A stretch of DNA of 64,000 nt, from IMG/VR virus record IMGVR_UViG_3300024999_000030, positions 124,001 to 188,000 of that record; one strand, 5' to 3'. Numbering within the stretch: the stretch's first letter is position 1; every line of letters begins with the position of its first letter. Shown here piece after piece: positions 13,444 through 57,849 of this stretch. A program made the translations under genes and the position numbers. Below the pieces are notes generated by a model that saw only the letters and a program-made list of their open reading frames with translations, had not been told where the DNA came from and made no database searches.

Positions 13444-13450
13444 GGATAAA

Positions 13451-14500
13451 ATGTCGACTATCAATAAAATTATAGGTAAAGGACTAACATTTGATGATGT
13501 CTTGTTAGTGCCCGGTTATTCTGAAATATCTTCCCGTAATGATATTACGGTTAAAGCTCAGCTCCATCCCAATCTCTGTTTAACTGTGCCGGTTATTTCA
13601 GCTAACATGGACACAGTAACGGGTGAGGAGATGTGCCGGATTATGCATAAACATGGGGGATTGGGAATTCTACATAGGTTTGCTCCAGAAGCAGAATTAA
13701 TTTCAATTGTGGAGACCCTACAAGAAGATAAGGTTAGATTTGGTGTTTCCGTAGGGGTAAACCTAGATGATGAAAAGCTTTTTAATTTATATTTATCTCG
13801 TGGTATAAATATTTTTTGTGTAGACGTAGCCCACGCTCATCATCAAAAGGTTAGATATCGTTTGAGACACATTAGAAATGCTAAAAAAGATGCTATTATT
13901 ATTGCTGGAAATGTAGCCACTCTCGATGGAGCTAATTTTCTTGCAGAAAATGGAGCCGATATCATTAAAGTCGGGATTGGCCCAGGTTCGCTGTGCTCAA
14001 CCCGCATTATGACGGGTTGCGGAGTTCCCCAGCTCACCGCTATTATTGATTGCGACGTTATTAAACAGAACCATCCTCATGTTAAAATTTTAGCTGATGG
14101 TGGAATTCGTTATCCAGGTGACATCACTAAGGCAATCGCGGCAGGGGCTGATGCGGTTATGATTGGTGGTATGTTAGCTGGCACAGAACAAACTCCAGGT
14201 TTAATCATTAAGAAGGGCACACCATCTAGGCCATTACTATATAAACGCTATCGCGGTTCTGCTTCCATGGAAGCTAAATCGTCTTCTGGTCGAGATATTA
14301 AATTTATAGAAGGGGTTTCAACAGATATTCCATATAGAGGGGACGCTTCCCTCGTTATTGATGAGATTATAGATGGATTAAAATCTGGGTGTTCTTATGT
14401 TGGAGCTAGTAGTTTATTGGAATTACAGGCTAAGGGCAGATTTGTAGAGGTTACACATGCAAGTTATGTTGAGGGAACTCCCCACGGTTCAGGCTATTAA
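13451..14500 (+). CDS. guaB: IMP dehydrogenase/GMP reductase family enzyme, no CBS domains
   Basis: [56 protein letters not shown] vs GMPR cannot be resolved by eye (flap YRGSAS). Confidence 0.8.
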
Positions 14501-14541: not shown

Positions 14542-15258
14542 ATGTCAGACAATGAAGTAGCAGGTATTGTGACTCAATTAGAAAGTCTACATACTAAACA
14601 TAAGGTAAGTAGCTACATCGGGCTTGGATTAGTGTTGTTAATATTGTTTTTTGCTGGTGTTGGAGCTTATATGCTTATGGGTCAACTTAAGGATCAAGCT
14701 GCAACAAATCAACAACTCGCCGCAACGCAGCAGCAAATTACTGATAAATTACAAACAATAGATACAAATAATCAAATTATTTTTGACCTTAAAAAGGAAA
14801 TTCAAGATATTAAAACTCAACAACAAATTACCACTGCTAAATATGATGTTTTATTAACACAAGCTGGTAGACAACTTCCCCAGCCACAACAAGATGCCTT
14901 TTTCACCTCTCGTGGTTTTATTCCCTCTTATTATCAAACAGATGGTGGTAGATTGTTTGGATCACAGGCTACAGTTAAGCTTCAAACGGCAATTGTGGAA
15001 GGTGAGAAGTGTGAAGAGTTGTCTGCTCAAAAGGATATCGAAATTGTTAAAAAAGATAATCTTATCGATACATATCAGAAACAAGTAATTGAATATCAGG
15101 GTGTTGATGGATTAAGGCAAGAAGAATTTAAAATTGTTGATAATGAACTTAAAAAAACACAAAAAGAATTGCGACGTGAAAAAATTAAAAAGTGGTTATG
15201 GACGTGCGCTAGTATTTCCGCTGCGGGATATGTCGGGTATCAAGTCGGCCATAACTAA
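14542..15258 (+). CDS. Membrane-anchored coiled-coil protein (spanin-like architecture possible)
   Basis: N-terminal TM helix, Q/K/E heptads, hydrophobic C-terminus. Confidence 0.5.
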   Translation: MSDNEVAGIVTQLESLHTKHKVSSYIGLGLVLLILFFAGVGAYMLMGQLKDQAATNQQLAATQQQITDKLQTIDTNNQIIFDLKKEIQDIKTQQQITTAKYDVLLTQAGRQLPQPQQDAFFTSRGFIPSYYQTDGGRLFGSQATVKLQTAIVEGEKCEELSAQKDIEIVKKDNLIDTYQKQVIEYQGVDGLRQEEFKIVDNELKKTQKELRREKIKKWLWTCASISAAGYVGYQVGHN

Positions 15259-21635: not shown

Positions 21636-22652
21636 ATGAGTTATTATGAAGCTTTAGGTGTTACTAAAGAGGCAACGGCGGAAGAAATTAAAAAGGCATA
21701 TAGGGAAGCCGCTCTTAAGTATCATCCCGATAGAAATCCTGGTAACCAAGAAGCTGAAGATAAGTTTAAAGTTGTTTCTGAAGCGTATTCTATTTTATCT
21801 GATGTTGAAAAACGCAGACAATATGATATGGGTGGCCAGAGCTATGATTTAAATGATCATGAAATGTGGGACGCTTTTTTTCCAGGTTTCCGCCCTAATT
21901 ATGGAGCGCCCGGCTCTCATAGAAGAAATTGGCCAGCAAGAGATGTGGAAACTGTTCTAAATATTACTTTAGAAGAGGCTTTTAGTGGAGTTGATAAAGA
22001 AATTTCATATCGAGCGGACATACCATGCTCGACTTGTAATGGGACCGGAGATTCCTCTGGGTCTAGAGCACAATGCTCTCATTGTCGAGGAACTGGAATG
22101 GAAAGCTCAAGACGAGGCAATTTTGTTGTACAGCGTGCCTGCCCCATATGTGGTGGAGATGGAAATTCTATCACTAATAAATGTGGTAAATGTAATGGGA
22201 GAGGCAGTATTAAAGAAGATAAAATTGTATCTGTAACTATTCCCGCCGGAATTCCAAATAGGGCTCAAATGAGAGTTCCAAACCACGGTGGAACTGGTGG
22301 CTTCCCAGGTCATGAAACTGTGACTGGAGATTTATATGTAAATATTATCATTCAACCACATCCAGAATTTATAAGGCAGGGAGAAGATATTAATTATCAA
22401 TTAAATATCTCTCCAGCTAAAGCTACTCTTGGTGGTACTGTAGATTTAAGTAATTTTATGTTTCATGGAACTGTGAAAATTCCGCCAGGAACCGCCAGTG
22501 GAACTAAATTTGCCGTTCGAGGAAAGGGAATGCCAAAATTTCAAAATAAAGGTCGGGGAGACTTTTATTATGAAGTAATAATTGTTCCCAAGACCCAGTT
22601 AACTGACAAGGAAACTGAACTATATCGACAGTTATTGGAGATGGAACAATGA
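21636..22652 (+). CDS. dnaJ: Type I DnaJ co-chaperone
   Basis: J domain with HPD; four CxxCxGxG repeats; C-terminal IPAG and GKGMP motifs. Confidence 0.95.
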
Positions 22653-43903: not shown

Positions 43904-44374
43904 CTATCTCTTCATCTCTAAAAGAGCGGCTAGTTCCAAGAAAGTAAGGATACTGGTTTCATTCATATTAGTATTCATCATAATATCACAATCTATAAGG
44001 ATATAAGTTCCCCGAGAAGCATCAGTATATAGATTAGTATTAGGAATGGCATCTTTTAGTATTCTAGTTTTACTCCATGGGCACTCAGAACAATTTAATA
44101 TATTATTATCCGTAAGTATACAAGTCGGATTCTTTATATCATTATGCCGAGTAATACTTCCACGTGCAGCTCTCCATTTATGATCTGGATTAACTATTTC
44201 TTCTGCTTGTTTAAAGTGTTTAATATACTGTCTATTGATGTTATTAAGAGAATTACACCACTCTTCCCCTTTGTTTTCTTCAGTTACACATGATTCAAAG
44301 TCGCGTATGTATGAATGTATACGGTAGAGGGTTGAGTCGATAATGTAAGATTTATGTGTTGACTGTTCGCTCAT
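43904..44374 (-). CDS. Divergent Cys4-family paralog
   Basis: C...CSECPW...C...ILTFLELAALLE. Confidence 0.55.
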   Translation of the reverse strand: MSEQSTHKSYIIDSTLYRIHSYIRDFESCVTEENKGEEWCNSLNNINRQYIKHFKQAEEIVNPDHKWRAARGSITRHNDIKNPTCILTDNNILNCSECPWSKTRILKDAIPNTNLYTDASRGTYILIDCDIMMNTNMNETSILTFLELAALLEMKR

Positions 44375-44389
44375 TATGGCCTCACTATC

Positions 44390-44418
44390 AATATAATTTG
44401 AACGTTGTTAATTGTCAA
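44390..44418 (-). promoter_or_regulatory. Promoter TTGACA-N17-TATATT
   Basis: Exact spacing; heads the long leftward transcription unit. Confidence 0.72.
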
Positions 44419-44574
44419 GTAAGAGTCGATGATAATTAAATAAGGATAATAATGGGGCCGCCGTTAAGAGGATACTGTATAGGATTGATATGGGTATTGT
44501 ATGGATATTGGGTATTTAAACAGGAGGTTATAAAGAGATCGGTGTAATAATGTAAAGGCTTATGAATACTGAAT

Positions 44575-44890
44575 AAGTGAGTCATTTATGACACAGTATA
44601 ATAATAAGATAAGTGAAATAATATAGAGAGGAGTTAGGAGAGAGTTAGGAGAGAGATACTGAGTTGTGTCTACAAAAATGACACATGTGACTTAAATGAC
44701 ACACTGGCGTATAATAGATAAGTGAAATTTATAATGAAATGACATTAAGATAACTATTAGATACTGGTAAAAGTGAGTCATTTATGACACACTTTACTAA
44801 TAGTATGAGCGGTTAAGTGCGATAATATGAGATAATATGAAGAATATATACTGATAATCAACATGTGACAAAAATGACTCACTTTCACTT
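44575..44890. repeat. Iteron-like cluster: aagtgagtcatttatgacac x2 (44575-44594, 44771-44790) plus an inverted variant (~44860-44889)
   Basis: Identical 20-mers with internal palindrome gtcat-tt-atgac, in an AT-rich non-coding divergent region. Confidence 0.75.
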
Positions 44891-45088
44891 AAGTTGTGAA
44901 AATACTACCCCCCAGACAATAAGAGTCTGAGGTAATATCAGTATCTCCCCGCCCTAAGTCTAAGCCAAGCATCAAGCGACTTACACTTGTAAAGAGTTTG
45001 GCCAGTATCAAAGTATAGCGTGACGCTGTGTCATGCTAGATACTGGCGCGAGTGTAAGAGACTTAGATACTGGCCAAAGGAGTTAAAG

Positions 45089-45481
45089 ATGGCTAACATC
45101 TTGAGCATGAAGGGCTTGGGCGTCAAGGTTACCGTCAAGGTAATCAAGAAGCACAAGTTCGTGGACGGTTCTCCCGAGCTGTCCCACAAGGGCGAGTACA
45201 CTCTCACCCTGTCGGCGGGGTCCAAGTCCGTCTCTACTAAGTGCGTGGGGACGGGCGAGTTGTTCGCCAAGTGCTACGCCATGATGAGCGTGCACTTCCC
45301 CAAGAGCTATGCTAAGTTCCAGGCCATCAGCAAGGTGGAGAAGGCCGCGAACAAGGCGAAGGCGAAGGCGAACCACAAGGCGAAGAAGGCGGCGGCCAGC
45401 GGCGTGGACTTGAAGAGCCTCGCCGCACTCCTCAACCGGGCGAAGAAGGGCAACGGTAAGATGCTGGCCCTGTTCCTCTAA
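45089..45481 (+). CDS. Highly basic Lys/Ala-rich protein, paralog 1
   Basis: RBS aaggag; GC-rich codons; aligns by eye with 56703-57104. Confidence 0.8.
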   Translation: MANILSMKGLGVKVTVKVIKKHKFVDGSPELSHKGEYTLTLSAGSKSVSTKCVGTGELFAKCYAMMSVHFPKSYAKFQAISKVEKAANKAKAKANHKAKKAAASGVDLKSLAALLNRAKKGNGKMLALFL

Positions 45482-45659
45482 GCCAGTATCTCATCATCTT
45501 TCCAGTATCTTATTATAGATACTGACACAATCTAAAGTAACTCATGGGTGGGTTAGTATAATACTAACCCTCTCTGGTCAGTATTCTCCCACCTGCGCGT
45601 GGTACTGACTGCTGATAGATACTGGTCTATCACAACGGGAGAAGATAAGGAGGAGTAAG

Positions 45660-45830
45660 ATGGGACAAGCTAGACAAAGGGGAACCCGGGAACAGCGTGT
45701 CGAACAAGCCCAAGGCCGCAAAGTCGGGGTGCCGGTTAACCTCACGGCACAGCTCCAGCGTAACTTCAGTAACAAAAGGAGTTTCCGTGAGTCGTTGTTC
45801 ACTCGGCTCACTCGTCTCTTTCGCTCTTAA
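45660..45830 (+). CDS. 56-aa basic protein, not in the ORF track
   Basis: RBS aaggaggag; MGQARQRGTREQR... Confidence 0.65.
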   Translation: MGQARQRGTREQRVEQAQGRKVGVPVNLTAQLQRNFSNKRSFRESLFTRLTRLFRS

Positions 45831-46027
45831 GGGGCAGCATCTCAATCATCTGCCTTGACCTCAGTACGTTGAAGTGCTCTGAGGCTAAGTAGGACTAGGA
45901 CTCTCTTATAGTAGAGCCAGCCTACCCCCAAATATAGCCAGTATCCAGAGCTGGTCGATCAGTATCTTAATTACTTAGATATTGGTCGGCCATAATGTGG
46001 GTACTGTATATAGTGGTGTGTGTTTGA

Positions 46028-46199
46028 ACCATACCACATATAGACAGAAAGATGGGTTTTGAGAAAAATGAGATCTAATACCTATAGTTAGTTAGTATCT
46101 CATTGTATAATACTGGCGCTATAATTAAGTATGTCTATATGTAGTGGTGTTAGTAAAGACCATACCACATATAGACAGAAAGATGGGTTTTGAGAAAAA
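46028..46199. repeat. 41-bp direct repeat (46028-46068, 46159-46199) with a partial third copy at ~46223
   Basis: accataccacatatagacagaaagatgggttttgagaaaaa seen twice. Confidence 0.9.
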
Positions 46200-46317
46200 A
46201 CAGTTGTGGTGTGTTATAAAGACACTACCACATATAGTAGTGTAACATAACAGCGCCAGTAATAAAGATACTAGCTAAACCATATGATACTGGATAAACC
46301 AACGGAGGGAAACCACA

Positions 46318-49300
46318 ATGGCTTATCATAAGTCTCAACGCCGCAATCTCAAACCTACAACCATCAGACAGTATCATTATGCTGTAAGCCGGCTTCTCAA
46401 TGCTTGCCCTCCCAATCTTCTCATACAAGTTATGAAAATGATTCGGGCAGGAGCAAAGACTTACCCAGTGTCTAAGATTCAATCTTTCATGGCCGGTAGT
46501 GGATTCTACATGTATTCACGAGAGATTAACAAAGCCATCAACGCTATGCAATGGGGATTATGCCCGCCTCAATATCGCATCTCCAAGAATAATCGCTGGT
46601 ATTTGGATACATTCCCTCAAGAGCCTGGACCGGTTGCTTATGCTGCCATGGAAACGGTCAGTATCAATCATCCAATTACTGCCCCCACACTTCAACCTGC
46701 CATGAACATTGTGTAAATAAAGATACTGGTCTGTAATTCTACCAGTATCTTACCTTCGCCGCCTAGTTACTTTGCATAGTGCAGGGAAACTTCGGCGCGA
46801 TCATAGGCTAATACAAGGAGGACAATATGGATTACGGGTAGCTAAGCTCAAACCTTAATTCAGTGTCTAGAGATGGCGGTCAGTATCGTCCAGTACAAAT
46901 GATTATAAACACTGGGATACTGGCCGTCACACTGTAGATACTGGACAAAACTTTCAATAGGAGGAGGCTACAATGGCCTACACACTATATAATCCACCGA
47001 CTAAGTGGTGGAAAAGGCAACACAGTATCACAATAACTATCTGGCCTAAGTGGTTAGCTCAGAAGCTTTGCAATCACTCTGCACCTAAACCTTCATGGAT
47101 TACTTCAAACACTTGCTACTCTTGCCCGGACTGTTACACTCTTATGATTCCTCCAGGAGCAGTCACCACGAAGGAATAGGGAGCGAGGTGAACGATGAAC
47201 GAGCAACCCAATAGTTCCATCTCAATCGTCCGTTACTCCAGAGATGGCTTCGTGGCTAAACGGCAGTCCAAACATATGTATAATGTTTGGCATGAGCTGT
47301 TTAAGTTTAATAGCCATGACATGCCAGAACATCTTCGTGGTGTCAGCGTAGAAGCACACCATAAGATCGTCCCTTTCTATCGTGAACACCTCGCTGATTT
47401 TAACTGGGGCATCTGGGTATTCATAGAGGGACACGATAACATGATGTCTCTCAATCATCTGCACGGTCAAGATAGGATGGGGCTTAAGCGTTGGACTGCT
47501 GTAATTCCCAGTAACACAGAGGTTTACGGTGTGGGGTGGGATGTCATTGTCTCTATTAGTGATTTCATTCCACAGATGTTCGGCTGCTTCATACCCAAAC
47601 GAAACATTCCTCTCATCACGGATATCAAGTGTGACGATGAATGTGATGTGGAGTTAGAGCTAGAGAGGTATGACTGGGAGCGTGAAGAAGAGAATCGCAT
47701 GCTCCGTTGTGGGTATTAGAAAGGAGGTGTCTTAAGTTGCCAGTCTTCATCGTTCAACAACTCGAAGGCGTCCACTGGTTTGATTCCGGTGATCATGGGG
47801 CCTGTCTGACGCGAATCCTTTCCAGCCAGAGAGAGGGGCTGGAGTTTGCGAGGGATGTTACCAGACGAACACAATTCGAAACCCGAGTAGTGGAGACAGA
47901 CAAAAACCGAATTGTTTACAACGTCTGGTCTCCGCACGCTCCATAACAATCCGTTCTTCACAGAGTACTCCTGTTAAAGGGAGTACTCAATCCCGTCAAT
48001 GTATACTAGCTGGTGGGACGGGGTAAGAGCACAATATATAGTAGTGCTCAGGCTAGTATGCCACAACATATAGGAGAACACATGAACATCAGTCGGCGTA
48101 AGAGGGGTTACATAAATCAGAGAGGAGGATAACAATGAATAGGGCTGATGTCCTCTTGATACTGGACGAAAAGTTTGCCAAGAAGGTGACGGATGAATAC
48201 AAGAAACGCACTGGATACAGTAATGTAATCGGTAGCGTTTCTAGCAATATGAAAGTCTTTATCCCCATCATTAAAGATATTCTTGATGATGGGCTTCGTG
48301 TACAAGAAGAAAACGAAAGAGAGGTGCGACATGATAAAAGTTGAACCGATGGAACCGCTGGACACAGAAAACTACGCCGTGCCCTTGAATCCTTTTCATC
48401 AAGACATATACAGTATGGGGACGACGCTGGGGACAAACGTGACGGTGATGTACGGAAATCATACTCACACTCATCAACCTTACATCATCGTTGTTAACCT
48501 GGATACTGGCGAACGAATCAAGATCGCTTTCTGAAAGGGAGGTGTGTCATGAACGAAAAGGAAAAGAACAGGATGCGACGATTATTGGAAATGGCTTATT
48601 TGTTTGCATGGGGTCCAGATGGTACGGCTGACCGCAGAGATGAATGGTGGGAACTTAAAGCTTTACTTCCCAACGTAGGAACGATGTGTTATGGTGGTAA
48701 TGGTAAATTCCGATGGGACGAATGAGCCAAATAGGTTCAGTTCTTTTTCATAAGGAGGCGTGCCATGGAACCGATCTTTGTTAACAATTGGGGCGAAATA
48801 CGAGGCGGTATCTCAGTGGATGAAGTCTTGAAGGGGGATGGTAAGCTAGCTGGCTTTACTGTCTCTGGCAAGAATCAAGATGGTAAGGAGTTCTGCATTG
48901 ACTTCTTCGTTCATGTTGGTGCCAAAAACATCACCATCACTTGCAGCTAAGGGAGGAGGAACTACATGGAATGGAAAGTCGTTGATACTGGCGATGAAAT
49001 CACCATCGTTCCTGAAACCCGCAATCTCCCCGGCAAAGTTCTTTTCGTCGGAACCTCAGTGGATTGCGATGAATATCTATATGAACTGAGCAACGACGAA
49101 TAACCTAACCCCATAAGGAGGCTCAACATGGAATGCGGATATCTAATTGCGTGGGTCGGTCCTTGTAAAAGCCAACCATCGGACGACAGTTCGTGCCGAT
49201 GTGACAAACACAAGGACAAAGTCTGTGCATCTTGTGGTGCTCCAGCCACTCAGGAATGCGATACGACGGGACAGTTCGTTTGTGGTGCTCCTCTCTGCAA

Positions 49301-50004
49301 CGATTGCGAGCACACCATCGCAGAAGACGGAACCAATGGTGGGGTTGGTTTCGTTCAACTCTCTCCCCTCCCACCGGGCTACAAGCCACACTGCAAGAAA
49401 ACGGAACAGAAATTCACCCCCTGGTTCATGAGGCCACTTTCGGAGAGCTAAGGAGGCTCGACATGCCACTAAAACCTGGCGATCGTTTACCCCGTGCTAA
49501 GGTAGATATCATGGACCTTAGCGAAGTGATGGATGAGGATATGAGGGGTAAGTTGGACACCCTTCGCACCCTCACTCCTCCTAAGCCCAACCTGTTTCAA
49601 CTGGAAGGAGGACCGGCGGATGGATAGAAAAGATCGAATCATCCAGCGCCAGAACAATGAAATACTGCTAATGGAGCTTCGTCTAGAGGAACTGGAAAGG
49701 ACCCTCGGTGAAGCGGTTAATCTCATCCAAGAAATCCACACAGAGATGATGACCGAGCTTCATACCTGTGCTCTGTTCGATGATAAGGTCTGGGTCATCG
49801 ATCAAGAATTGGCAATGGCCCACGCTGCCTTTGAGGAGGATATGGCAAAGGGCCTTGAGACACTTCAAGACGATGAAAGGTCAGATGGCGTACTGGATTC
49901 ATGAAGCAGAGCAGGGAGAGGCATCTGGATATCTTGGTCCCGATAAGAGTGAAGAGTTTCTCAGTAGGATCCTTAACAAGCTGGATGTGCCTCCAGAGGA
50001 TTAA
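46318..50004 (+). other. Cluster of ~14 short hypothetical ORFs with strong SD sites, including Cys-rich Zn-finger 49128-49451
   Basis: aggagg-type RBS before nearly every start. Confidence 0.6.
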
Positions 50005-50054
50005 ACCAGTATCTCTATAGTCTTAAAGATACTGGCGAAGTAATAGATACTGAG

Positions 50055-50920
50055 CATGGATGACACGTGACTCAGTTCTATAGGTAAGCCTAGCATATAG
50101 CATGTAGCGTCTCCTATAAGAGGCACGTGACTATATGTTGTCGGATGGTGGCTAGGCATGTCGGGTAGCAGGCGGGTGGCTAATCCGATACTTCAGTTTC
50201 AATCATCGCACGTCACCTACTAAATAAGTGGTACGGCGGTAGTTGATTAGAGCCCATTTTAATCGCGTGACGATGATTCAGGGTAGGTCCAGTGACTCCT
50301 GCAATACACTTACCTCTGACGGGCTGATAACCCCTCATGCGAGTAATGTGACGGGAGACCATAGCACATGAATGCCCTTATCCCTATAGGGGACGGAACG
50401 TATGTGACTATGAGAATCGTCCAGAGTAAGAGCCTGGATGATAGGAGAGACGCGTAAGCGACTCTAAAGACTGGACGAATTAGACGGCAGGTGGGTGGCC
50501 AGTCTAATGGGTTTGCAAAACTATTCTACTGCATGGAGGGACGGCAAAAGCCCTTCCCAGTTTCCGTTAAGCGGTGCTGACCGTGACGGTGGAATAGTTT
50601 AAAGGGTAGGCTTAGAAATATACCACATGGAGAAGACACCCCAATCGAGTGGAGTCAGTCATATAGATGGCCTGTGATGGTATAGGGGCTTATGGAGAGT
50701 AAGCCAGGCTAAGCGGTTAGGGTGAGCAGGTGAGTGGCTTCCTAACACTTAAGTTAAACTGGTGTCTATCATATAGGTAGCGTCCGGTAGAGTCCGGTGT
50801 GTATGATGGGCCAGGAAAGGTAAGCGAGGAGATGGCATCGTAGATGTGGGAGTTTTCTTCCTATGGTGCAGATTAGGCGGTCCTCGCGTGGCGTCAGCAG
50901 GTGGGTGGCAGGCGCTCTCG
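50055..50920 (+). ncRNA. Candidate large structured non-coding RNA (~870 nt)
   Basis: No ORF >=60 aa in the track; many nested stems with G-U pairs; four GC-AGGYGRGTG-GC stem-loops. Confidence 0.72.
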
Positions 50921-50943
50921 GAATAATATGAAAGGAGGCGGCT

Positions 50944-51294
50944 ATGACTTCAAGAGAAAATCTTCAAAGAATTAATGAAGCAATCAAAGCCGCTAAACAT
51001 TTAATTAAACACCCCCATAGTAAATCGGCATGGGGGAGTTTAGATTATAACACTCTGCCAATAGGCAATTATTCATCAAAAGGATTTACTTGTCCAATAA
51101 GTTGTGATAATTGTCCACTGGCATTGGGAATAACTCCGTTGAATCTTCCTGAGTTTATTTGTGAGGGTAATGCCCATGACATTATAATGGAAAAACAAAT
51201 CATGGGAGAGGTTATATTACTTCTCATTCAATTTGTGGCCACTATGGAAGTAGTCCAGGAGGATATTAAAAGGGGCCAAGGAGGTACAACATGA
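50944..51294 (+). CDS. Cys4-family paralog
   Basis: CPISCDNCPL...FIC...GEVILLLIQFVA. Confidence 0.8.
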   Translation: MTSRENLQRINEAIKAAKHLIKHPHSKSAWGSLDYNTLPIGNYSSKGFTCPISCDNCPLALGITPLNLPEFICEGNAHDIIMEKQIMGEVILLLIQFVATMEVVQEDIKRGQGGTT

Positions 51295-51593
51295 GAAAAT
51301 TAAATAATAAAGAAAGACGAGCACAGATAGAAGCAGTAAAACAATTATTAGATGACGTTAAAGATATTTATCTTTGGAGATAATTACATTCTGTTACTGG
51401 ATTCTTTAATTCAATAGATTTCTGTCCGGACCTTCCTGGTCAAATTTTAAGGTGTCTGCATTGTCCCTTAAGATTGAACTCAGCAACTCATTTATGTCGA
51501 TATAGACATCAGAATTATAAGGAAGTCATAATATCGGATGGTGAAATAACCATTAGGCTTCTGGAGTTTCTAGCCTATATACAAATAACCTAA
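51291..51593 (+). pseudogene. Cys4-family paralog with in-frame TAA at 51381-51383
   Basis: ...IYLWR*LHSVTG...CPDLPGQILRCLHCPLR...HLCRY...DGEITIRLLEFLAYIQ. Confidence 0.8.
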
Positions 51594-51609
51594 CGAAAGG
51601 AGGCTTCAG

Positions 51610-52023
51610 GTGAGAAAATGTAATGGATGTAAGCAGACCAAAGATGAATATTACATGCTTAAACCTGAAGTCTGGATACAGGCATGTATGAAGCCCGTTA
51701 AAAACATCCCAGTAATATCTGTCCTACGCATGCTTTGTGTATCATGTGTAGAAAAGAGACTGGGAAGGGAACTTAACTGGCGGGACTTTGCTCTTTGCCG
51801 ACTTAACTTGGACCCATCTGAACCGAGAACGGCTATACTTCAAGATCGAATGAGTGGTATAACCAATCGCCTTCCACAGTGGTTCTTCAATAGATACGGT
51901 GAAGATCAATGGGATGTGTCGGCCTTAGCTTATGGATGGCCACTGAGAGGAGGATGCAATGAAAAACACACCGATAGAAAAAGCAAAGCGGGCGGCGGAG
52001 TATCTAATCAAGCATCCTCATAG
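51610..52023 (+). CDS. Hypothetical phage protein
   Basis: C..C, YML...VW, LCVSCVEKRLGREL...DF. Confidence 0.6.
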   Translation: MRKCNGCKQTKDEYYMLKPEVWIQACMKPVKNIPVISVLRMLCVSCVEKRLGRELNWRDFALCRLNLDPSEPRTAILQDRMSGITNRLPQWFFNRYGEDQWDVSALAYGWPLRGGCNEKHTDRKSKAGGGVSNQASS

Positions 52024-53528
52024 TAGAATCGCTTGGGCTATGTTAAGCGATAATACTTCTCCTTCGTGGGGCAATAAACTAATTCGGTGTCCATTTGATT
52101 GTTATAACTGCCCATTAAGAACTGGCGCAAATGAATTAGGTCTTCAGACATATATATGTGGTAAGTCTGATTTTGAATCCAAGAGTGGTAATTTATTCGG
52201 AGAGGTTATATTGTACCTCATCCAATTTGTTGCTTTTGTGGAAGCGTTTCAAGGGGCAAAGCCATGATAATCACATTTAAAAGTGTCATCAACATGCCTG
52301 ATTAGATTCATTGCCTTTGCTCAGGTGGAAGTGGAGGATTCCCATGAAAGTCCCAGATAAAGAGGATAGGCAATTACAACTCACGACGATTTACGACCTG
52401 ATAAATAACTTGGATGATCCCAAGTATTGGAGAAGACTTTGGAACGTTACTGGGGGGCACTATGAGGAGCCAAAAGCAGAATGGAAAGATTTTTGTCCAT
52501 CTATTGATGGTTCGCTCCGGTGCTATAATTGCCCCCTTCGAGTGTTGGGTGAACATTATCAAGTCAACTATCTCTGTCGCCATAGTGGTTCTAACAAACC
52601 TGATCCAGCTAATGGAGAAGTCCTTCGTAGGTTATTGGAGTTTCTAGCCTACTCACAATTATAAGGAGGGTCCAAATGAAATGAGAGGATATGAAATAAG
52701 GACCCAGGAACAAATGGAACATCAAATAAAAGTAGCCCAAGCATTACTTAACGACTTAAGTAATGTGAATCTATGGAAGGAACTGTCTCGTATAACTGGA
52801 CTACAACCAGTCGTAGTAAGTAAAACTAGATTAACTAAGACTGATTACTGTCCAGGTTTATCCGTCTCAACTCCCTCACGGTGTAAAATCTGTCCTCTTT
52901 GTCTCCCTAGAGCCCAAGTACCTGGACAAACTTCAAAATGGGATTACTATCTCTGCCGAAGGTATATGTCTCATGAAAAATTGTGTCCAGAGATAGAAGA
53001 TGGGGAAGCGACTCGTAGGCTATTGGAATTCATAGCCTTCATACAAATACAACCCGACTCATAGGAGGTGACGATGAAAATCTCTCGCGTTCCATCACAG
53101 TTCGCCCCTGGTCGCTACAACGATGAATTCGTTTATAGGGAGGTGATCATGAAGCATGGTGTTACATGACCAACTCAAATAGTACAACCCCCATCAAAAT
53201 CATCAAAGAAATCCCTGAAGAACAAATCAAAGCAGCCCAGTATCTAATCAATCACATTGATGATCCTGAAGGCTGGAAACGCTTGCAGGAAGTAACTGGT
53301 GATACTGGGATCTTTGAATCCACAATCGATCACTGTGGCGACAATGCATACTCTGGAAGGCTGCCACAGATCACATGTTCAGCGTGTCCCCTCAGGGTAG
53401 AAAGTAGCACATATCTCTGCCGATATAGTCACCCAAATTATCCTCATGTCAATATGGAGGACAGTGCGATAATTCTGAAACTGATAGAGTTTATCGCATA
53501 TGTTCAAACAGTTTTTCCTAAGGCATGA
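51959..53528 (+). CDS. Four tandem Cys4-family paralogs (51959-52267, 52344-52664, 52681-53064, 53166-53528)
   Basis: C..CxxCPL..Y(L/I)C..GE...L(L/I)(E/Q)F(I/L/V)A in each. Confidence 0.8.
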
Positions 53529-53846
53529 GATATACTTGGAAGGAATGCAGAGAGTTAATTAGCTGCTGCACTTAAAGTAGTAGCTAAGCCACGATCCAAG
53601 AAAGCCTGGAAGGAACTGGGTAAAGTTACTGGTGTGAATTATCGCACACCCGACAATAGTCTAGTCGGGAAAGAAGTCGATTTTTGTAAGAAGGCTTGTT
53701 CCAAATGTCCCTTGTATGTAAAGAGAGCGGTATACATTTGCCGCAAGGACATTTGGCCAGAAATGTTGATAGACGTTAGTGAGGGCGAAATCCTTCGTCA
53801 CTTGCTAGAGTTTATCGCTCACATCCAAATACAGGAGGAGCAGGAC
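53525..53846 (+). pseudogene. Cys4-family paralog with a +1 frameshift near 53560 and no stop before ORF 53847
   Basis: ATGA overlap start MRYTWKECRELI; other frame continues AAALKVVAKPRSKKAWKELGKVTG...CSKCPL..YIC..EGEILRHLLEFIA. Confidence 0.65.
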
Positions 53847-53984
53847 ATGGCAAACGCATCTCAACTCCGTCGGGCCAAAGCGAACAAACTCACCGCCACC
53901 CAGGAACGCAAGCAGTCTCTCAAGGCTAATCGTGTCTTCGGACAGACGAGGACGACGATGCCAAGGAAGTCCAAGAGCCGTTAG
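53847..53984 (+). CDS. 45-aa basic peptide with its own RBS
   Basis: ggaggag then ATG; MANASQLRRAKANK. Confidence 0.55.
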   Translation: MANASQLRRAKANKLTATQERKQSLKANRVFGQTRTTMPRKSKSR

Positions 53985-54108
53985 TCTCCGTTAGTATTCA
54001 GAGCCAGTGGGCCAGTATCTTATAATGTAACAATCTCAACAATGAGATACTGGCTCATTGTAATGTGGATACTAACTCTGGGGCGAAAGTTTAAATGGGA
54101 GGTGGACA

Positions 54109-54768
54109 ATGGAAAAACTGATATTGCCCCTGATGAAGCCCGACCCGAAACAAATAGCAAAGGAAATGAACATAATGAACATGAAGACGGTCGGAAGCAA
54201 TTATCTTGAGAATCTCTTTCGGCCCCCAGGATATGCAAAGCTTATCATCACTGCCACCATTCAATTCATGAATACTCAATTTCCCAAGGATACTGGGCTG
54301 ATTGTTACTGGACTTAGCGGAAGTTTACTGGGATATGCCATCATGCTCTTGGGTGGTATTCCAGTAGCCTTTGTCCGTAAGGATGATGAACATTCTCATG
54401 GTGAAAGGATTGAAGGTATCCTCGCAAAGAAAGTCGTGTTCTTTGACGACTTCATTGCTAGGGGGACGACCTTTTTAAATATTCAAACGGCCATCCAGAA
54501 ACACAATCACATATTATCCAGCAAGGTTAAATTTGCTGGCTCTTTCTTCTGGTCATATTTCGATGTTATGTGTAAGGAAGAAGTTGCCAAGAACGGTCCC
54601 GTGTTTCGACTTCAGGTTGCCCGTTCTCCTGGGTCAAGTTATATCCAACGCTGGAACGATCATGACTCTAGGTGGAAGCTTCTTGAAAAATACAAGCTAG
54701 GATCCTATGACGATCCTTCTTGGAAACAACCTCCCAAGGAAATCAACTTATCTGGCGATGCTGTGTAA
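54109..54768 (+). CDS. Type I phosphoribosyltransferase (orotate PRTase-like)
   Basis: VAFVRK..HSHG..IEG and PRPP-binding VVFFDDFIARGTT. Confidence 0.75.
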   Translation: MEKLILPLMKPDPKQIAKEMNIMNMKTVGSNYLENLFRPPGYAKLIITATIQFMNTQFPKDTGLIVTGLSGSLLGYAIMLLGGIPVAFVRKDDEHSHGERIEGILAKKVVFFDDFIARGTTFLNIQTAIQKHNHILSSKVKFAGSFFWSYFDVMCKEEVAKNGPVFRLQVARSPGSSYIQRWNDHDSRWKLLEKYKLGSYDDPSWKQPPKEINLSGDAV

Positions 54769-55048
54769 TTAAACTACAACCAAGGAGGTGGGAATGAACA
54801 TAAGAAAACTGGAAGTCATCCGGCAGGTATATCGTCGGGCATTCCTGGATCAGTCTCATACCTTTAAATTGAAAGACCGGCTCCAACGCATCTCTCAATT
54901 GAACGGCAAGAATGCTGAAGGAACAACAGTCTTCTTCGTTCGGGCATTTAAGACTGGGTGTGGTGGGGGTGTTTACTACGAGATTATCAAGGAAACGGAG
55001 AACAAAGACATCCCCCATATAAACTGTCTTTCCTGAAGGGATAAGACG

Positions 55049-55258
55049 ATGGTACTGGCAGACTTCAAACCTGGCGACCGGGTTAAGGTCGTGTCGGAAG
55101 AGAACTGGGGCAACCGCAAGAACCTCGTGAATAAGACGGGGGTGGTTGTTAAGACCATGAACGTCCATAAGGATGGCGTGGTGATGGTTAACATGGACGA
55201 CAGAAGGTGGAGACAGCAGACCTTCTATCCGTCCCAACTCAGTATCGTCCAGGACTAG
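55049..55258 (+). CDS. Single KOW/SH3-like beta-barrel protein
   Basis: FKPGDRVKV....TGVVV....VMVNMD. Confidence 0.55.
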   Translation: MVLADFKPGDRVKVVSEENWGNRKNLVNKTGVVVKTMNVHKDGVVMVNMDDRRWRQQTFYPSQLSIVQD

Positions 55259-55748
55259 GAAGAGTTAACAGGTCGTGGTCAAACTCCCAGTGATGGTTTG
55301 GGCATAAGATGTGAGTGTTTTTCGGCCCATTAATTTCCCCTAGAGTCATAGGCACTGGACACTTTGATATGGCTATGATGTGAGCGACTTCAACATGCTT
55401 ACTGTAGCCACACACCTGACATCCCTTGCTTAATCTCTCTCGATTCCAGCGCCTGGCTAATCCCCTAATGCCCGAATACCTATTAGCGGGTAAACCTTTG
55501 CTTGTCTTGTGGCCATTGAGGTGTTCTTCAAGAGTAGATGACTTCAATTTTGCGGCAAGTTTATCTATCTCTTTCCTACATGGCAGGCAAAATGTTCTCC
55601 TGCTGGTACATGGTCCTCCACATTTAGCACATTTATGCTCTGGCTTGCGTTTAGGGTGGCGTAGATTGTTGTAGGTTGCGGCACAAGATTTAGAACAGAA
55701 CTTGTCATTGTCATGGGACTTTAAACACTGGGGACATTGCTTCTGCAT
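55239..55748 (-). CDS. HNH endonuclease with N-terminal Zn fingers
   Basis: FCSKSC; CQVCG...EVAHI...N...LCPNHHWEFD; RBS aaggag. Confidence 0.85.
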   Translation of the reverse strand: MQKQCPQCLKSHDNDKFCSKSCAATYNNLRHPKRKPEHKCAKCGGPCTSRRTFCLPCRKEIDKLAAKLKSSTLEEHLNGHKTSKGLPANRYSGIRGLARRWNRERLSKGCQVCGYSKHVEVAHIIAISKCPVPMTLGEINGPKNTHILCPNHHWEFDHDLLTLPSPGRY

Positions 55749-55809
55749 GTTAATCTCCTTTGAACACACTATATACTGTTTTATTAATATAGCGTGTTCA
55801 AATCTTTTT

Positions 55810-55885
55810 GGGTCGTTAGCTTAGCATTGAAAGCCATCGGCTCATAACCGATAGATCACAGGTGAGAATCCTGTACGACCCACCA
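55810..55885 (+). tRNA. tRNA with CAT anticodon (elongator Met or Ile2), atypical elbow
   Basis: Acceptor gggtcgt/acgaccc + ACCA; anticodon arm atcgg-ctcataa-ccgat; T arm acagg-tgagaat-cctgt. Confidence 0.85.
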
Positions 55886-55886
55886 T

Positions 55887-55961
55887 GGGCCCGTAACTCA
55901 ATGGTAGAGTATCGCCCTTTTAAGGCGAGAGTTGAGGGTTCGAGTCCCTCCGGGCCCACCA
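55887..55961 (+). tRNA. tRNA-Lys(TTT)
   Basis: Acceptor gggcccg/cgggccc + ACCA; tcgcc-cttttaa-ggcga; TTCGAGT. Confidence 0.95.
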
Positions 55962-55999
55962 CTTATCTTATACAGGCGAACGCCAGGAAGGAGGTAACC

Positions 56000-56380
56000 G
56001 TGCCGTGCGATTGCGGTAATTGCCATTTCGGATTCAACTGTTCCAAAGAGTGGCAGACTCTCCACCCCGGAACGACCTGGTACGCCTGCGAGTTCTGCGG
56101 ACTCTATCAGGCTTCAGCTCCCATGTGTAACAAGTGCGAGCTGCAGGAGGAAGAGACCAAGTCCGGTATGAAGAGGTACGAGTTCCAGCGGCGCTCCCCA
56201 TTCTCTGGTAAGATTCACACCATGACCATCCAGATGACGGAGCAGCAGTTCGCGGAACTCTCCCAGCCCAACGGTCGTCACATCCAGGACATCCTCCCCC
56301 ATTGCACCCCCGATGAGAGGGAGTTCATCATGACCGGTATCACTCCCGAGGAATGGGAGCAGACCTTCGGGAAGAAGTAG
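56000..56380 (+). CDS. Cys-rich N-terminus plus conserved phage domain (IQ...P...EREF..TG.T..EW)
   Basis: RBS ggaggt before GTG 56000. Confidence 0.65.
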   Translation: MPCDCGNCHFGFNCSKEWQTLHPGTTWYACEFCGLYQASAPMCNKCELQEEETKSGMKRYEFQRRSPFSGKIHTMTIQMTEQQFAELSQPNGRHIQDILPHCTPDEREFIMTGITPEEWEQTFGKK

Positions 56381-56387
56381 TTACTTT

Positions 56388-56473
56388 GCGGCTGTGGTGG
56401 AATGGCATACACTACAGACTTAAAATCTGTCGGTCGTAAGACCTTGCGGGTTCGAATCCCGCCAGCCGCACCA
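56388..56473 (+). tRNA. tRNA-Leu(TAA), long variable arm
   Basis: Acceptor gcggctg/cagccgc + ACCA; acaga-cttaaaa-tctgt; TTCGAAT. Confidence 0.95.
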
Positions 56474-56702
56474 GCCCTTCCCAGTATCTCTTTCGTCCGA
56501 ACCGATAGGATACTGTCTCTGGCATTTCCCAAGGTGGAGATGCTGTATAATCGTAAGACCCACGGTAATGTATAGAGAGGATAAGCCTACTCTATCTATT
56601 GTGGGGACGGAGTAGTACCGCATTCCAGTATTAAAATGAGTCCAGGATACTGGTCTTGCGGAAACTTAAACTGGACCAAAGATCATAGGGGTTTTACAAC
56701 AA

Positions 56703-57104
56703 ATGAATATTCTCAACCAGAAAGGCCTCGGCGTGAAGTTCGTGGTTAAATGCACCAGGAAGGCAGTCTTCATCGAGGGTTCGCCCGAGAAGTCTTCCAA
56801 GGGGCATTACAACCTCACCGTCAGCGCCGGCGCCAAGAAGTTCTCCACGACCTGCATTGGTTCGGGAGAGCTGTTCGCTAAGGCATGGGCGATGTTGGCT
56901 GCCCACTTCCCCGCCGCCTATAAGAAGGCGACGGCCATCTCCAAGCAGCAGCGCGATGAAAACCGCGCCAAGGCAAAGACCACCCGGAAGGCGAAGAAGT
57001 CCGCTGCCTCCGGCGCCGATGTCAAGACGCTGCTTCAGGCTCTTGCTCGTCAGGGTAAGGGCAAGGGTAAGGGCAACGGTAAGCTTGTTGCCCTCTTCCT
57101 GTAG
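56703..57104 (+). CDS. Highly basic Lys/Ala-rich protein, paralog 2
   Basis: Shares NIL..KGLGVK, GSPE.S.KG, GELFAK, ASG.D.K.L, GNGK..ALFL with 45089-45481. Confidence 0.8.
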   Translation: MNILNQKGLGVKFVVKCTRKAVFIEGSPEKSSKGHYNLTVSAGAKKFSTTCIGSGELFAKAWAMLAAHFPAAYKKATAISKQQRDENRAKAKTTRKAKKSAASGADVKTLLQALARQGKGKGKGNGKLVALFL

Positions 57105-57124
57105 TCGGAACTTTTAATCCGGCT

Positions 57125-57345
57125 ACCCACAATCTGAATTAACCCCCGGAGGGTCCCTGACGGGACCCTTCAATCCTGCCGGTGTCCCGTCGCTCGTGGG
57201 GCAGGGTAAGCAGACTTTATAGTTTGCAGGCGATGGGAAAGAAGTTCGGTTAGTGTCATTAGACACTAAGAAAGGTAGGTGCCGATGAAGCAGAGTTTTA
57301 AGGCTTAGTCTATTGGTAGACTATAGCCGGCACCACAGGCGATAC
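57125..57345 (+). ncRNA. Candidate structured RNA or leader
   Basis: Hairpins agggtccc/gggaccct, ttagtgtc/gacactaa, ggtgccg/cggcacc enclosing tagtcta/tagacta. Confidence 0.4.
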
Positions 57346-57384
57346 TCAACGACTTAGAGTTTTATCTCCACACAGGAGGTTACG

Positions 57385-57648
57385 ATGAGCGAAACCAAAG
57401 GTACTCTCGGTAGCGTTTTGGCAAAAGCCCTTCACAACACCCCCATCGAAGCCCGGCTCAAGGAAGAGAAGTTCAATGCTTCCCAGCGGGAATGGCTCAA
57501 GGACATCCTCATGCGCGACTTGAGGTTGGTGGAACCCAAGGTTCTGGGAGACGCCATTCATGAGGCTTCCGTCCGAATCAACAAGGGTGAAAACGAGTGG
57601 CGACTGCTCCGCGACAAAGCTGTTCGAGCACTCTCTCTTCGCAAGTAA
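57385..57648 (+). CDS. Hypothetical protein
   Basis: RBS caggagg; GC-rich codons. Confidence 0.7.
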   Translation: MSETKGTLGSVLAKALHNTPIEARLKEEKFNASQREWLKDILMRDLRLVEPKVLGDAIHEASVRINKGENEWRLLRDKAVRALSLRK

Positions 57649-57849
57649 GTTAACCTTCACTTAGTCTACTCCGGATAGGTCGGCCAGGTACATTCGCCGG
57701 GATTATCTTGGAGGTGGGGTAGGCATTGGCATAGAACTATGTGGGTGAGAACGGTCGTAAGGCCCGGAGTGACCACATATCATTAGTTATGTCATGTAAG
57801 CCCTATCCCTTTAAGGCTTTACCAGTATCAACCTTCGTAGGAGACAGAC

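What the first reader, a model, noticed from the sequence alone, without database searches (positions are those of the whole stretch)
45089..57104. Two paralogous histone-like basic proteins in matching regulatory contexts
Seen: 130- and 133-aa paralogs 11.6 kb apart, with a beta-rich N-half, a Lys/Ala-rich linker and a conserved GNGK..ALFL end. Each is preceded by octamer inverted pairs and followed by cacaatct.aa.taac (~45527, ~57128). They have among the most GC-rich codons in the window. Inference: abundant early DNA-binding proteins, and the best candidates for the octamer's cognate factor.
Basis: partly seen in the sequence, partly recalled or inferred. Interest (0 to 1): 0.6.

Follow-up and report, generated by a model that had tools for sequence, protein, structure and literature searches.

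The report
Orphan basic protein pair, jumbo phage

Summary
Two genes, 45089-45481 (130 aa) and 56703-57104 (133 aa), encode paralogs with 57% identity (E 2e-39). Both are preceded by CCAGTATC/GATACTGG pairs. Both are followed by a 16-mer that occurs only twice in the 332,730-bp genome. They rank first and second of 447 ORFs for GC3 (0.90 and 0.77; genome mean 0.32).

The family is tiny. A profile search of 1.84 billion representatives found two real relatives. There were no Pfam, PHROG or NCBIfam matches. Two paralogs also occur in related phage contigs, where they again have top-ranked GC3.

Two AlphaFold models agree on the architecture:
- a Lys/Ala-rich helix
- a Gly/Lys linker of variable length
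- a nearly invariant GNG..ALF(L/P) C-terminal tip

I found no HU/IHF-like or other DNA-binding fold.

The octamer is a block-wide hairpin cassette with covarying flanks. It is not specific to these two genes.

My best reading is an abundant, probably early, low-specificity nucleic-acid binder. The fold slightly favours RNA over DNA. The tethered tip would dock on a partner, and the private flanking elements would serve autoregulation. "Histone-like" rests on composition alone. "Octamer factor" is untested.

The parts
45089..45481 (+). Paralog A, 130 aa, pI 10.2, GC3 0.90 (rank 1 of 447). AAGGAG ribosome-binding site 7 nt upstream; stop codon TAA.
56703..57104 (+). Paralog B, 133 aa, pI 10.5, GC3 0.77 (rank 2 of 447). 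Stop codon TAG.
44997..45078 (+). Large hairpin just 5' of A. Its 18-nt arms contain CCAGTATC (45002) and GATACTGG (45066), and a further GATACTGG at 45039 lies inside. It ends 10 nt before the ATG. RNA fold -39.5 kcal/mol, z -6.5. The 230 nt upstream of A are 88% identical to L003, against 74% for the CDS.
56481..56516 (+). Octamer pair upstream of B (CCAGTATC ... GATACTGT, one mismatch), directly after tRNA-Leu.
56625..56653 (+). Second octamer pair upstream of B (CCAGTATT ... GATACTGG, one mismatch), ending 49 nt before the ATG. The fold of this stretch is no better than its shuffles (z -0.45).
45483..45525 (+). Octamers directly after the stop of A: CCAGTATC at 45483 and 45502, GATACTGA at 45518. 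The last two form an 8-bp hairpin.
45526..45541 (+). Private 16-mer CACAATCTAAAGTAAC, predicted unpaired between two hairpins.
45550..45570 (+). Perfect 10-bp hairpin after the 16-mer of A. No T-run follows it.
   Evidence: (I16)
57102..57125 (+). 8-bp hairpin that includes the stop codon of B. It is conserved in L003.
57128..57143 (+). Private 16-mer CACAATCTGAATTAAC, predicted unpaired between two hairpins. The same 16-mer follows both paralogs in L003.
57148..57171 (+). GC-rich 10-bp hairpin after the 16-mer of B, with 4 compensatory pair changes against L003. No T-run follows. Further conserved pairing extends to about 57245.
57385..57648 (+). 87-aa gene of unknown function, next to a family member in G000, L003 (94% identical), L004 and L015. 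A possible functional partner.
44575..44884 (.). Context: four copies of a 20-nt near-palindrome (AGTGAGTCATTTATGACACA) in the 700-bp strand-switch intergenic region upstream of A. Conserved in L003 and L004.
55810..56473 (+). Context: tRNA-Met, tRNA-Lys(UUU) and tRNA-Leu(UAA) upstream of B.

Best explanation
A and B belong to a lineage-restricted orphan family of 14-kDa, strongly basic proteins. The phage makes them in very large amounts from the block of small genes that starts at the strand switch, most likely early and with host tRNAs.

Each protein has four parts:
- a compact roughly 70-residue alpha/beta domain with dsRBD-like topology
- a Lys/Ala-rich helix carrying about +9 net charge
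- a Gly/Lys linker whose length varies between members
- a nearly invariant hydrophobic C-terminal tip, GNG(K)xxALF(L/P)

The most likely mechanism is bulk, low-specificity binding of nucleic acid through the basic helix and the globular domain. The fold favours structured RNA (mRNA hairpins or ribosomal RNA) somewhat over B-DNA. The tethered tip would act as a short docking peptide for a partner protein or a neighbouring protomer.

Each gene is its own unit bracketed by hairpins. Each carries a private, conserved 16-mer displayed between two hairpins. Together with the unusually conserved 5' flank, this element is probably where expression of the gene is controlled, plausibly by the protein itself.

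Shown here: paralogy, the restricted distribution, the codon bias, the predicted architecture, and the conserved flanking elements. Inferred: abundance, timing, nucleic-acid binding, the docking role of the tip, and autoregulation.
For: Real, conserved genes:
- Eight family genes were found, in G000 and four related contig groups (L003, L004-L007, L010, L015). They split into an A-type and a B-type clade with 93/95 support.
- Two copies are present wherever enough context is visible: G000, L003, and L004-L007.

Extreme G/C-ending codon use in three lineages:
- G000: ranks 1 and 2 of 447 ORFs.
- L003: ranks 1 and 2 of 32 genes (0.98).
- L004: ranks 2 and 3 of 34 genes.
- Chaperone genes, GyrB and bS21 of the same genome have GC3 of 0.24-0.31.

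Charge: pI 10.2 and 10.5, with +9 net charge on residues 71-105.

Fold:
- Two independent models (pLDDT 72-73 overall, 80-88 in the N-domain) give the same topology.
- Below them come ribosome hibernation factors and uS5, which are also RNA binders.

Tethered tip:
- Linker indels span up to 8 residues, while G-N-G and A-L-F are invariant.
- The tail is disordered in both models.
- No other ORF in the genome ends this way.

Constrained flanks:
- The 230 nt upstream of A are 88% identical to L003 and those upstream of B are 80%, against 74% and 71% for the coding sequences.
- The 16-mer occurs only after the two paralogs, also follows both L003 paralogs, and a related motif follows the L010 and L015 genes.
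- The hairpin-16mer-hairpin layout shows compensatory changes.
Against: - No binding of any kind was tested.
- The dsrm HMM does not match, even at E<=10 within this genome.
- The canonical KKxAK motif at the start of helix 2 is replaced by ELFAKAW (read; the motif itself is from my own knowledge).
- The best-matching dsRBDs are the degenerate, protein-binding type (Staufen RBD5, Loquacious dsRBD3). A purely protein-binding role therefore remains possible.
- Codon bias could partly reflect the compositional regime of the block rather than expression level.
- No RNA run holds this phage, so neither abundance nor timing has been observed.
Confidence: 0.4

Rival explanations
1. One reading: classical histone-like (nucleoid-associated) proteins that coat or bend double-stranded DNA of the phage or the host, as phi29 p6 or SPO1 TF1 do.
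For: The proteins are small and very basic, and the Lys/Ala-rich stretch recalls H1/Hc1/HupB tails. Abundance is inferred from codon bias. Two diverged paralogs are retained, which recalls the HU alpha/beta and IHF pairs. phi29 p6 is a precedent for an abundant early viral histone-like protein (PMC4974454).
Against: No sequence match to any nucleoid-protein family. tblastn against 50,697 phage records found nothing. Neither Foldseek nor the exhaustive structural search brought up HU/IHF, H-NS, Alba, Sso7d or similar folds; the N-domain matches RNA-binding or protein-binding dsRBDs instead. The Lys/Ala segment is a single predicted helix of about 30 residues, not a repeat array.
Confidence: 0.22
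2. Sequence-specific factor for the octamer. The proteins recognise CCAGTATC/GATACTGG, either as DNA or as the stem of RNA hairpins whose 11-14 bp length suits one dsRBD, and so control the whole block through termination, antitermination, processing or mRNA stability.
For: Family and octamer co-occur in every related contig, including short contigs of 746 bp and 1,993 bp. The octamer forms convergent pairs 17:1, and the outer flanks covary, so a hairpin is selected. The fold is dsRBD-like. A is the first gene of the block, and each paralog is followed by a single-stranded motif plus hairpin, a layout that recalls lambda nut sites (my own knowledge).
Against: The co-occurrence is by common descent and is not independent. 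dsRBDs read shape far more than sequence, and the canonical RNA-contact motifs are absent here. Very high abundance is unusual for a sequence-specific regulator. The octamer flanks many other genes equally. In the GATACTGG orientation it is over-represented on the sense strand 15-55 nt before start codons, which would fit a promoter-terminator cassette read by host RNA polymerase. No phage RNA polymerase or sigma factor was found.
Confidence: 0.12
3. Host-takeover protein that acts mainly through protein-protein contact. The C-terminal peptide plugs a host hub, for example the beta sliding clamp (xLxLF-like motif), the DnaK substrate site or a protease adaptor. Alternatively the protein sits on the ribosome, like the abundant early jumbo-phage protein PhiKZ014.
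For: The tip is nearly invariant behind a flexible linker, the typical architecture of a short linear docking motif. [LIMV][VLIMT]ALF resembles the clamp-binding pentapeptide QL[SD]LF without the Gln (my own knowledge). The best fold matches are protein-binding type-B dsRBDs, followed by ribosome hibernation factors and uS5. There is weak similarity of the basic helix to bS21 (E 0.16). PhiKZ014 shows that very abundant early jumbo-phage proteins can target ribosomes (PMC10914614).
Against: No partner is known and the host is unknown. The phage has no clamp of its own. The bS21 similarity is not significant, and the bS21 HMM finds the genome's real bS21 gene elsewhere but not these genes. A net charge of about +19 to +21 argues for a nucleic-acid contact as well.
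Confidence: 0.16
4. Virion internal protein. A basic protein packaged with the DNA, either to neutralise charge or to be injected, and highly expressed like structural genes.
For: Basic, small and apparently abundant.
Against: The genes lie in a block of small ORFan genes without any recognisable structural gene. That block uses a codon regime different from the rest of the genome. No capsid-targeting or cleavage motif was seen. Capsid genes could not be located for comparison.
Confidence: 0.06

Closest known systems
Double-stranded RNA-binding domain (dsRBD, Pfam PF00035), especially degenerate type-B dsRBDs (Staufen RBD5, Loquacious dsRBD3, TRBP dsRBD3)
Phage phi29 protein p6 (viral histone-like protein); SPO1 TF1 and HU family
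   Same: Small, apparently abundant, probably early phage proteins that would act in bulk on nucleic acid (PMC4974454).
   Different: No sequence similarity. A different predicted fold. p6 is acidic to neutral and binds through bendability patterns as dimers. DNA binding is not shown for this family.
PhiKZ014, the abundant early ribosome-binding protein of jumbo phage PhiKZ
   Same: A jumbo-phage orphan protein among the earliest and most abundant products, acting on RNA (it clamps the 5S rRNA end) by charge-based contacts, with an unstructured C-terminal part (PMC10914614).
   Different: No homology. PhiKZ014 is much larger and multi-domain. Ribosome binding is only a hypothesis for this family.
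Bacterial SSB C-terminal tip and beta-clamp-binding motifs (tethered short linear motifs)
   Same: A nucleic-acid-binding body, then a flexible linker of variable length, then an invariant terminal peptide. The peptide resembles xLxLF (motif from my own knowledge).
   Different: The SSB tip is acidic (DDDIPF), whereas here the run-up is basic. The Gln of the clamp motif is missing. No partner was tested.
PeSL promoter-terminator cassettes of T4-type phages (for the octamer hairpins, not for the proteins)
   Same: Conserved-sequence stem-loops that separate small, variable, early-type ORFs (PMC2839356, PMC4122927).
   Different: A different sequence. No sigma-70 consensus is enriched in the block. 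Promoter activity is not shown.

Membership tests
HU/IHF bacterial histone-like proteins (PF00216) | Sequence match to the family HMM | tested here: not met
   No Pfam hit at E<=10 for any of 7 members. No NCBIfam hit either.
HU/IHF bacterial histone-like proteins (PF00216) | Helical dimerisation body with protruding beta-ribbon arms | tested here: not met
   The models show beta-beta-beta-alpha plus one long helix. No HU/IHF chain appears among the Foldseek or exhaustive structural matches.
H1/Hc1/HupB-type Lys/Ala-repeat DNA-binding tails | Tandem AKKA/PAKK-type low-complexity repeats that bind DNA | tested here: inconclusive
   There is one Lys/Ala-rich stretch of about 30 residues with +9 net charge, predicted helical. 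No repeat array and no Pfam match. DNA binding cannot be tested here.
dsRBD (PF00035) | alpha-beta-beta-beta-alpha fold of about 65-70 residues | tested here: inconclusive
dsRBD (PF00035) | Match to the dsrm HMM | tested here: not met
   No hit by hmmscan at E<=10. No hit in a six-frame search of the genome at E<=10, while the control rang in 10 genomes.
dsRBD (PF00035) | Conserved RNA-contact motifs (GPxH loop, KKxAK at helix 2) | tested here: not met
   The alignment shows EGxPE in the loop and ELFAKAW at the helix start. The motif definitions are from my own knowledge.
Ribosomal protein bS21 (PF01165) | Match to the family HMM | tested here: not met
   The HMM finds the phage's real bS21 at G000:277409-277564 (E 2e-18) but not the paralogs at E<=10. 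The profile search against PDB bS21 gives E 0.16, not significant.
phi29 p6-type viral histone-like protein | Sequence homology | tested here: not met
   tblastn of A against 50,697 phage records found no match. No PHROG at a meaningful E-value.
phi29 p6-type viral histone-like protein | Multimeric coating of dsDNA, shown biochemically | not testable with these tools
   Needs purified protein.
Beta-clamp-binding proteins | QL[SD]LF-type pentapeptide that docks in the clamp pocket | tested here: inconclusive
   The C-terminus [LIMV][VLIMT]ALF[LP] fits xLxLF but lacks Gln. The phage encodes no clamp. The host is unknown and binding was not modelled.
PeSL-like promoter-terminator cassette (octamer element) | Conserved intergenic stem-loop between small early ORFs | tested here: met
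   There are 17 convergent exact pairs against 1 divergent. The sites are mostly intergenic. Outer flanks covary: mean extra pairing 1.78 against 0.84 +/- 0.14 with shuffled partners.
PeSL-like promoter-terminator cassette (octamer element) | An early promoter embedded in the cassette | tested here: inconclusive
   Sigma-70-like sites are not enriched (25 found against 22.5 expected). GATACT resembles a -10 hexamer and is in excess on the sense strand. No conserved -35 element lies at a fixed distance.

The most novel reading that the evidence does not exclude
The pair is the protein half of a phage-specific RNA regulon. A dsRBD-like, highly abundant protein would recognise the conserved-sequence hairpins that punctuate the early block, and/or the private 16-mer-plus-hairpin module behind its own genes. 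Through its tethered C-terminal peptide it would recruit or block a host machine such as RNA polymerase with Nus factors, an RNase, or the ribosome. The result would be a nut/N-like or mRNA-protecting system built from parts with no known homologs.
Probability: 0.12. Interest if true: 0.75.

Novelty: new variant of a known kind. Interest (0 to 1): 0.45.

Why it matters
Jumbo phages from groundwater are known almost only from sequence, and their early genes are mostly orphans. These two genes stand out by an objective measure: they have the strongest codon bias of 447 ORFs, and the same holds in related phages. They are therefore likely to be among the phage's most abundant products.

Their modular build offers a tractable entry point into how an uncultivated giant phage takes over its host. 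The parts are a small folded domain, a basic helix and a tethered invariant peptide, together with unusually conserved private flanking elements.

If the partner of the C-terminal tip is a conserved host hub, the peptide could be a useful probe. If the proteins read the block-wide hairpins, this would be a new post-transcriptional control system. If they are plain charge-neutralising binders, the finding is ordinary.

Tried and rejected
Searches that found nothing:
- Pfam, PHROGs and NCBIfam scans of all members gave no consistent hit.
- The word-based protein search found only two relatives.
- The exhaustive profile search of 1.84 billion representatives found two real relatives, one a fragment, plus one low-complexity false hit of 1,035 aa. 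This search has no length filter, so the domains were not searched separately.
- megablast and tblastn against phage records found no match.
- The IMG/VR scan found nothing beyond the phage itself.
- The metagenome scan found only the same phage and one new short contig.
- The ESM Atlas by features (whole protein and residues 1-72) gave no usable hit. The Atlas by shape gave TM <= 0.43.
- Foldseek against PDB and BFVD gave nothing at E <= 0.001.
- Rfam found only the three tRNAs.

Complex prediction: the A+B heterodimer job gave a score of 0.00 and the verdict "no answer". It is not evidence either way.

Ideas tested and dropped:
- bS21 kinship was rejected.
- Read-through of the stop codon into the 16-mer: the 16-mer's TAA/TGA is in frame with both G000 genes but out of frame in both L003 orthologs, so I treat it as coincidence (sequences).
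- A C-terminal motif shared with other phage proteins, as in T4 clamp clients: no other ORF ends this way.
- A phage clamp, T7-type or multisubunit RNA polymerase, or sigma-70: none detected.
- Capsid families PF07068 and PF05065, sought for a codon-bias comparison with a late gene: not found.

Expression data: only DNA runs from groundwater and soil hold the sequence and no RNA run does.

No genetic code other than table 11 was applied, although the genome carries a tRNA with anticodon CUA. Orthologs end at the same residue with TAA or TAG, so TAG is read as a stop here.
Full report
**Setting**

The window is bases 124,001-188,000 of a 332,730-bp virus record that CheckV rates as complete. 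The same sequence is held by groundwater metagenome runs; no RNA run holds it.

The genome carries 29 tRNAs, a bS21 gene, GroEL, DnaJ, an AAA ATPase and an intein-containing GyrB. No T7-type or multisubunit RNA polymerase, sigma-70, or sliding clamp was detectable.

At about window 44 kb transcription switches from the minus strand to the plus strand, and GC rises from 31-35% to 43-53%. The same step occurs in related contigs.

**Checking the observation**

Both ORFs exist as described. They are 57% identical (E 2e-39) and are the only two copies in the genome.

The alignment of seven family members confirms the conserved N-terminus, the Lys/Ala-rich middle and the GNG..ALF end.

The octamer CCAGTATC occurs 28 times in the window against 1.24 expected. 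Twenty-six of those lie between 43.9 and 57.8 kb, and only 12 further copies occur in the remaining 269 kb of the genome.

Pairs of the octamer do precede both genes, but they precede many other genes of the block as well. That part of the "matching context" is generic to the block.

The 16-mer CACAATCTNAANTAAC is different. It occurs exactly twice in the genome, 45 and 24 nt after the two stop codons, and it also follows both orthologs in the related contig L003. A similar ACAATCTTAAAGT motif follows the family gene in L010 and L015.

In both paralogs the 16-mer is predicted to be single-stranded between two hairpins. The distal hairpin of B shows four compensatory pair changes against L003.

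- GC3 is 0.90 and 0.77, ranks 1 and 2 of 447 ORFs (mean 0.32, sd 0.10).
- Lys is encoded by AAG 44 times and by AAA twice, against 29% AAG elsewhere in the genome.

**Distribution of the family**

The word-based search found two non-self relatives. The exhaustive profile search of 1.84 billion representatives found two real ones, one of them a fragment, plus a false low-complexity hit. The metagenome scan added one more short contig.

Context is visible in three lineages:
- G000 and L003 each have an A-type and a B-type copy, 11.6 and 8.3 kb apart.
- L004-L007 have a tandem pair of B-type copies that are 88% identical.

The A and B clades separate with 93/95 support, so the duplication is older than the split between these phages.

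In every lineage the family genes are at or near the top for GC3: L003 ranks 1 and 2 of 32, L004 ranks 2 and 3 of 34. This repeated pattern argues for selection on translation, meaning high expression with a host tRNA pool that prefers G/C-ending codons. A one-off transfer would not explain it.

The non-coding 5' flanks are more conserved than the coding sequences: 88% against 74% for A, and 80% against 71% for B.

**What the proteins look like**

They weigh 13.8 and 14.1 kDa, with pI 10.2 and 10.5.

Two AlphaFold models, one per paralog and built on alignments of 4 and 7 sequences, agree (pLDDT 72-73 overall, 80-88 in the first 80 residues):
- three strands, then a 15-residue helix
- then a long helix carrying the Lys/Ala run
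- then a disordered tail

Foldseek found nothing significant in PDB or BFVD.

- The dsrm HMM does not match.
- The characteristic Lys-rich start of helix 2 reads ELFAKAW instead.

No nucleoid-protein fold or family appeared anywhere.

A weak profile match of the basic helix to bS21 (E 0.16) is not supported. The bS21 HMM finds the phage's genuine bS21 elsewhere in the genome and ignores these genes.

The tail is the most suggestive feature. The Gly/Lys linker varies by up to eight residues, while G-N-G and A-L-F are invariant. No other ORF in the genome ends this way. This is the usual build of a tethered docking peptide.

**The octamer**

Exact pairs are convergent 17 times and divergent once, across the window and three related contigs. 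Loop lengths run from 8 to 56 nt.

The bases just outside the octamer are complementary more often than with shuffled partners: mean 1.78 against 0.84 +/- 0.14. The sequences themselves differ, for example GGGG/CCCC, AGAAGA/TCTTCT and TTTGG/CCAAA.

That is the behaviour of a hairpin with a conserved stem. A fixed-spacing operator would not show it.

The GATACTGG orientation is in excess on the sense strand (41 against 24) and often lies 15-55 nt before a start codon.

The closest known thing is the PeSL promoter-terminator cassette of T4-type phages (PMC2839356, PMC4122927).

None of this points specifically to A or B as the factor that reads the octamer. None of it excludes that either.

**Interpretation**

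I commit, at a confidence of about 0.4, to an abundant and probably early nucleic-acid binder with a tethered docking tip and private control elements. The fold tilts the substrate towards structured RNA.

The rival readings are:
- a classical dsDNA histone-like role: 0.22
- a host-hub or ribosome binder: 0.16
- an octamer-specific factor: 0.12
- a virion internal protein: 0.06

PhiKZ014 (PMC10914614) and phi29 p6 (PMC4974454) are the functional precedents for the RNA and DNA versions respectively.

The heterodimer test returned no verdict.

**Novelty**

The family has no detectable relatives outside a handful of groundwater and soil phage contigs, and the domain combination has not been described. 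The kind of thing it is, a small, basic, abundant phage protein, is familiar.

Noticed in passing
window 43949-57829 (and L003, L004-L007, L010, L015): The octamer CCAGTATC/GATACTGG is a block-wide hairpin cassette. It occurs 28 times in the window against 1.24 expected. Exact pairs are convergent 17:1, the outer flanks covary, and GATACTGG is in excess on the sense strand. It resembles the T4 PeSL promoter-terminator cassettes.
   Followed up: partly
window 44575-44884: Four copies of a 20-nt near-palindrome (AGTGAGTCATTTATGACACA), about 90-110 nt apart in alternating orientation, in the strand-switch intergenic region. The motif is conserved in L003 and L004. It looks like a true operator or an origin iteron set.
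   Followed up: partly
window 50944-53984; L003:5091-7356; L004:5842-12842: Tandem array of Cys-rich paralogs of about 105-125 aa. There are 6 copies here and 5 genes at the matching position in L003 (3 matched by BLASTP). L004 carries a run of about 21 same-sized tandem genes, 4 of which BLASTP linked to the window copies. No known family.
   Followed up: partly
window 57385-57648: An 87-aa gene that lies next to a family member in G000, L003, L004 and L015. It is 94% identical between G000 and L003, more conserved than the paralogs, and also GC3-rich. No Pfam or PDB match.
   Followed up: partly
window 44000 onward; L003 and L005: Sharp compositional and codon-usage step at the strand switch: GC goes from 31-35% to 43-53%, and 20 of the 25 highest-GC3 ORFs of the genome lie in 169-188 kb. 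The step is conserved in related phages, which suggests a separate codon regime for this block.
   Followed up: partly
G000:C1:11061-33549 and 14708-14783: A cluster of 26 tRNA genes far from the window, including one with anticodon CUA (amber-reading). No recoding was assumed or tested.
   Followed up: no
G000:C1:277409-277564: A phage-encoded ribosomal protein bS21 (PF01165, E 2e-18).
   Followed up: no
window 6422-8083, 8144-9541, 10399-13443, 13376-14500, 21636-22652: GroEL-type chaperonin, AAA ATPase, GyrB interrupted by an intein, an IMPDH/GMP-reductase-like enzyme, and a full DnaJ. This is an unusually rich chaperone and metabolism set for a phage.
   Followed up: no
window 57172-57250: Beyond the terminator-like hairpin after B, a further conserved and partly covarying structure is shared with L003. 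No Rfam match. It may be a small structured RNA or a long 3' UTR.
   Followed up: partly
window 55239-55769 (minus strand) and 54109-54768: An HNH endonuclease gene (PF13391, E 1.4e-9) on the opposite strand, directly beside the tRNA-Met/Lys pair. A phosphoribosyltransferase-like gene lies just upstream.
   Followed up: no
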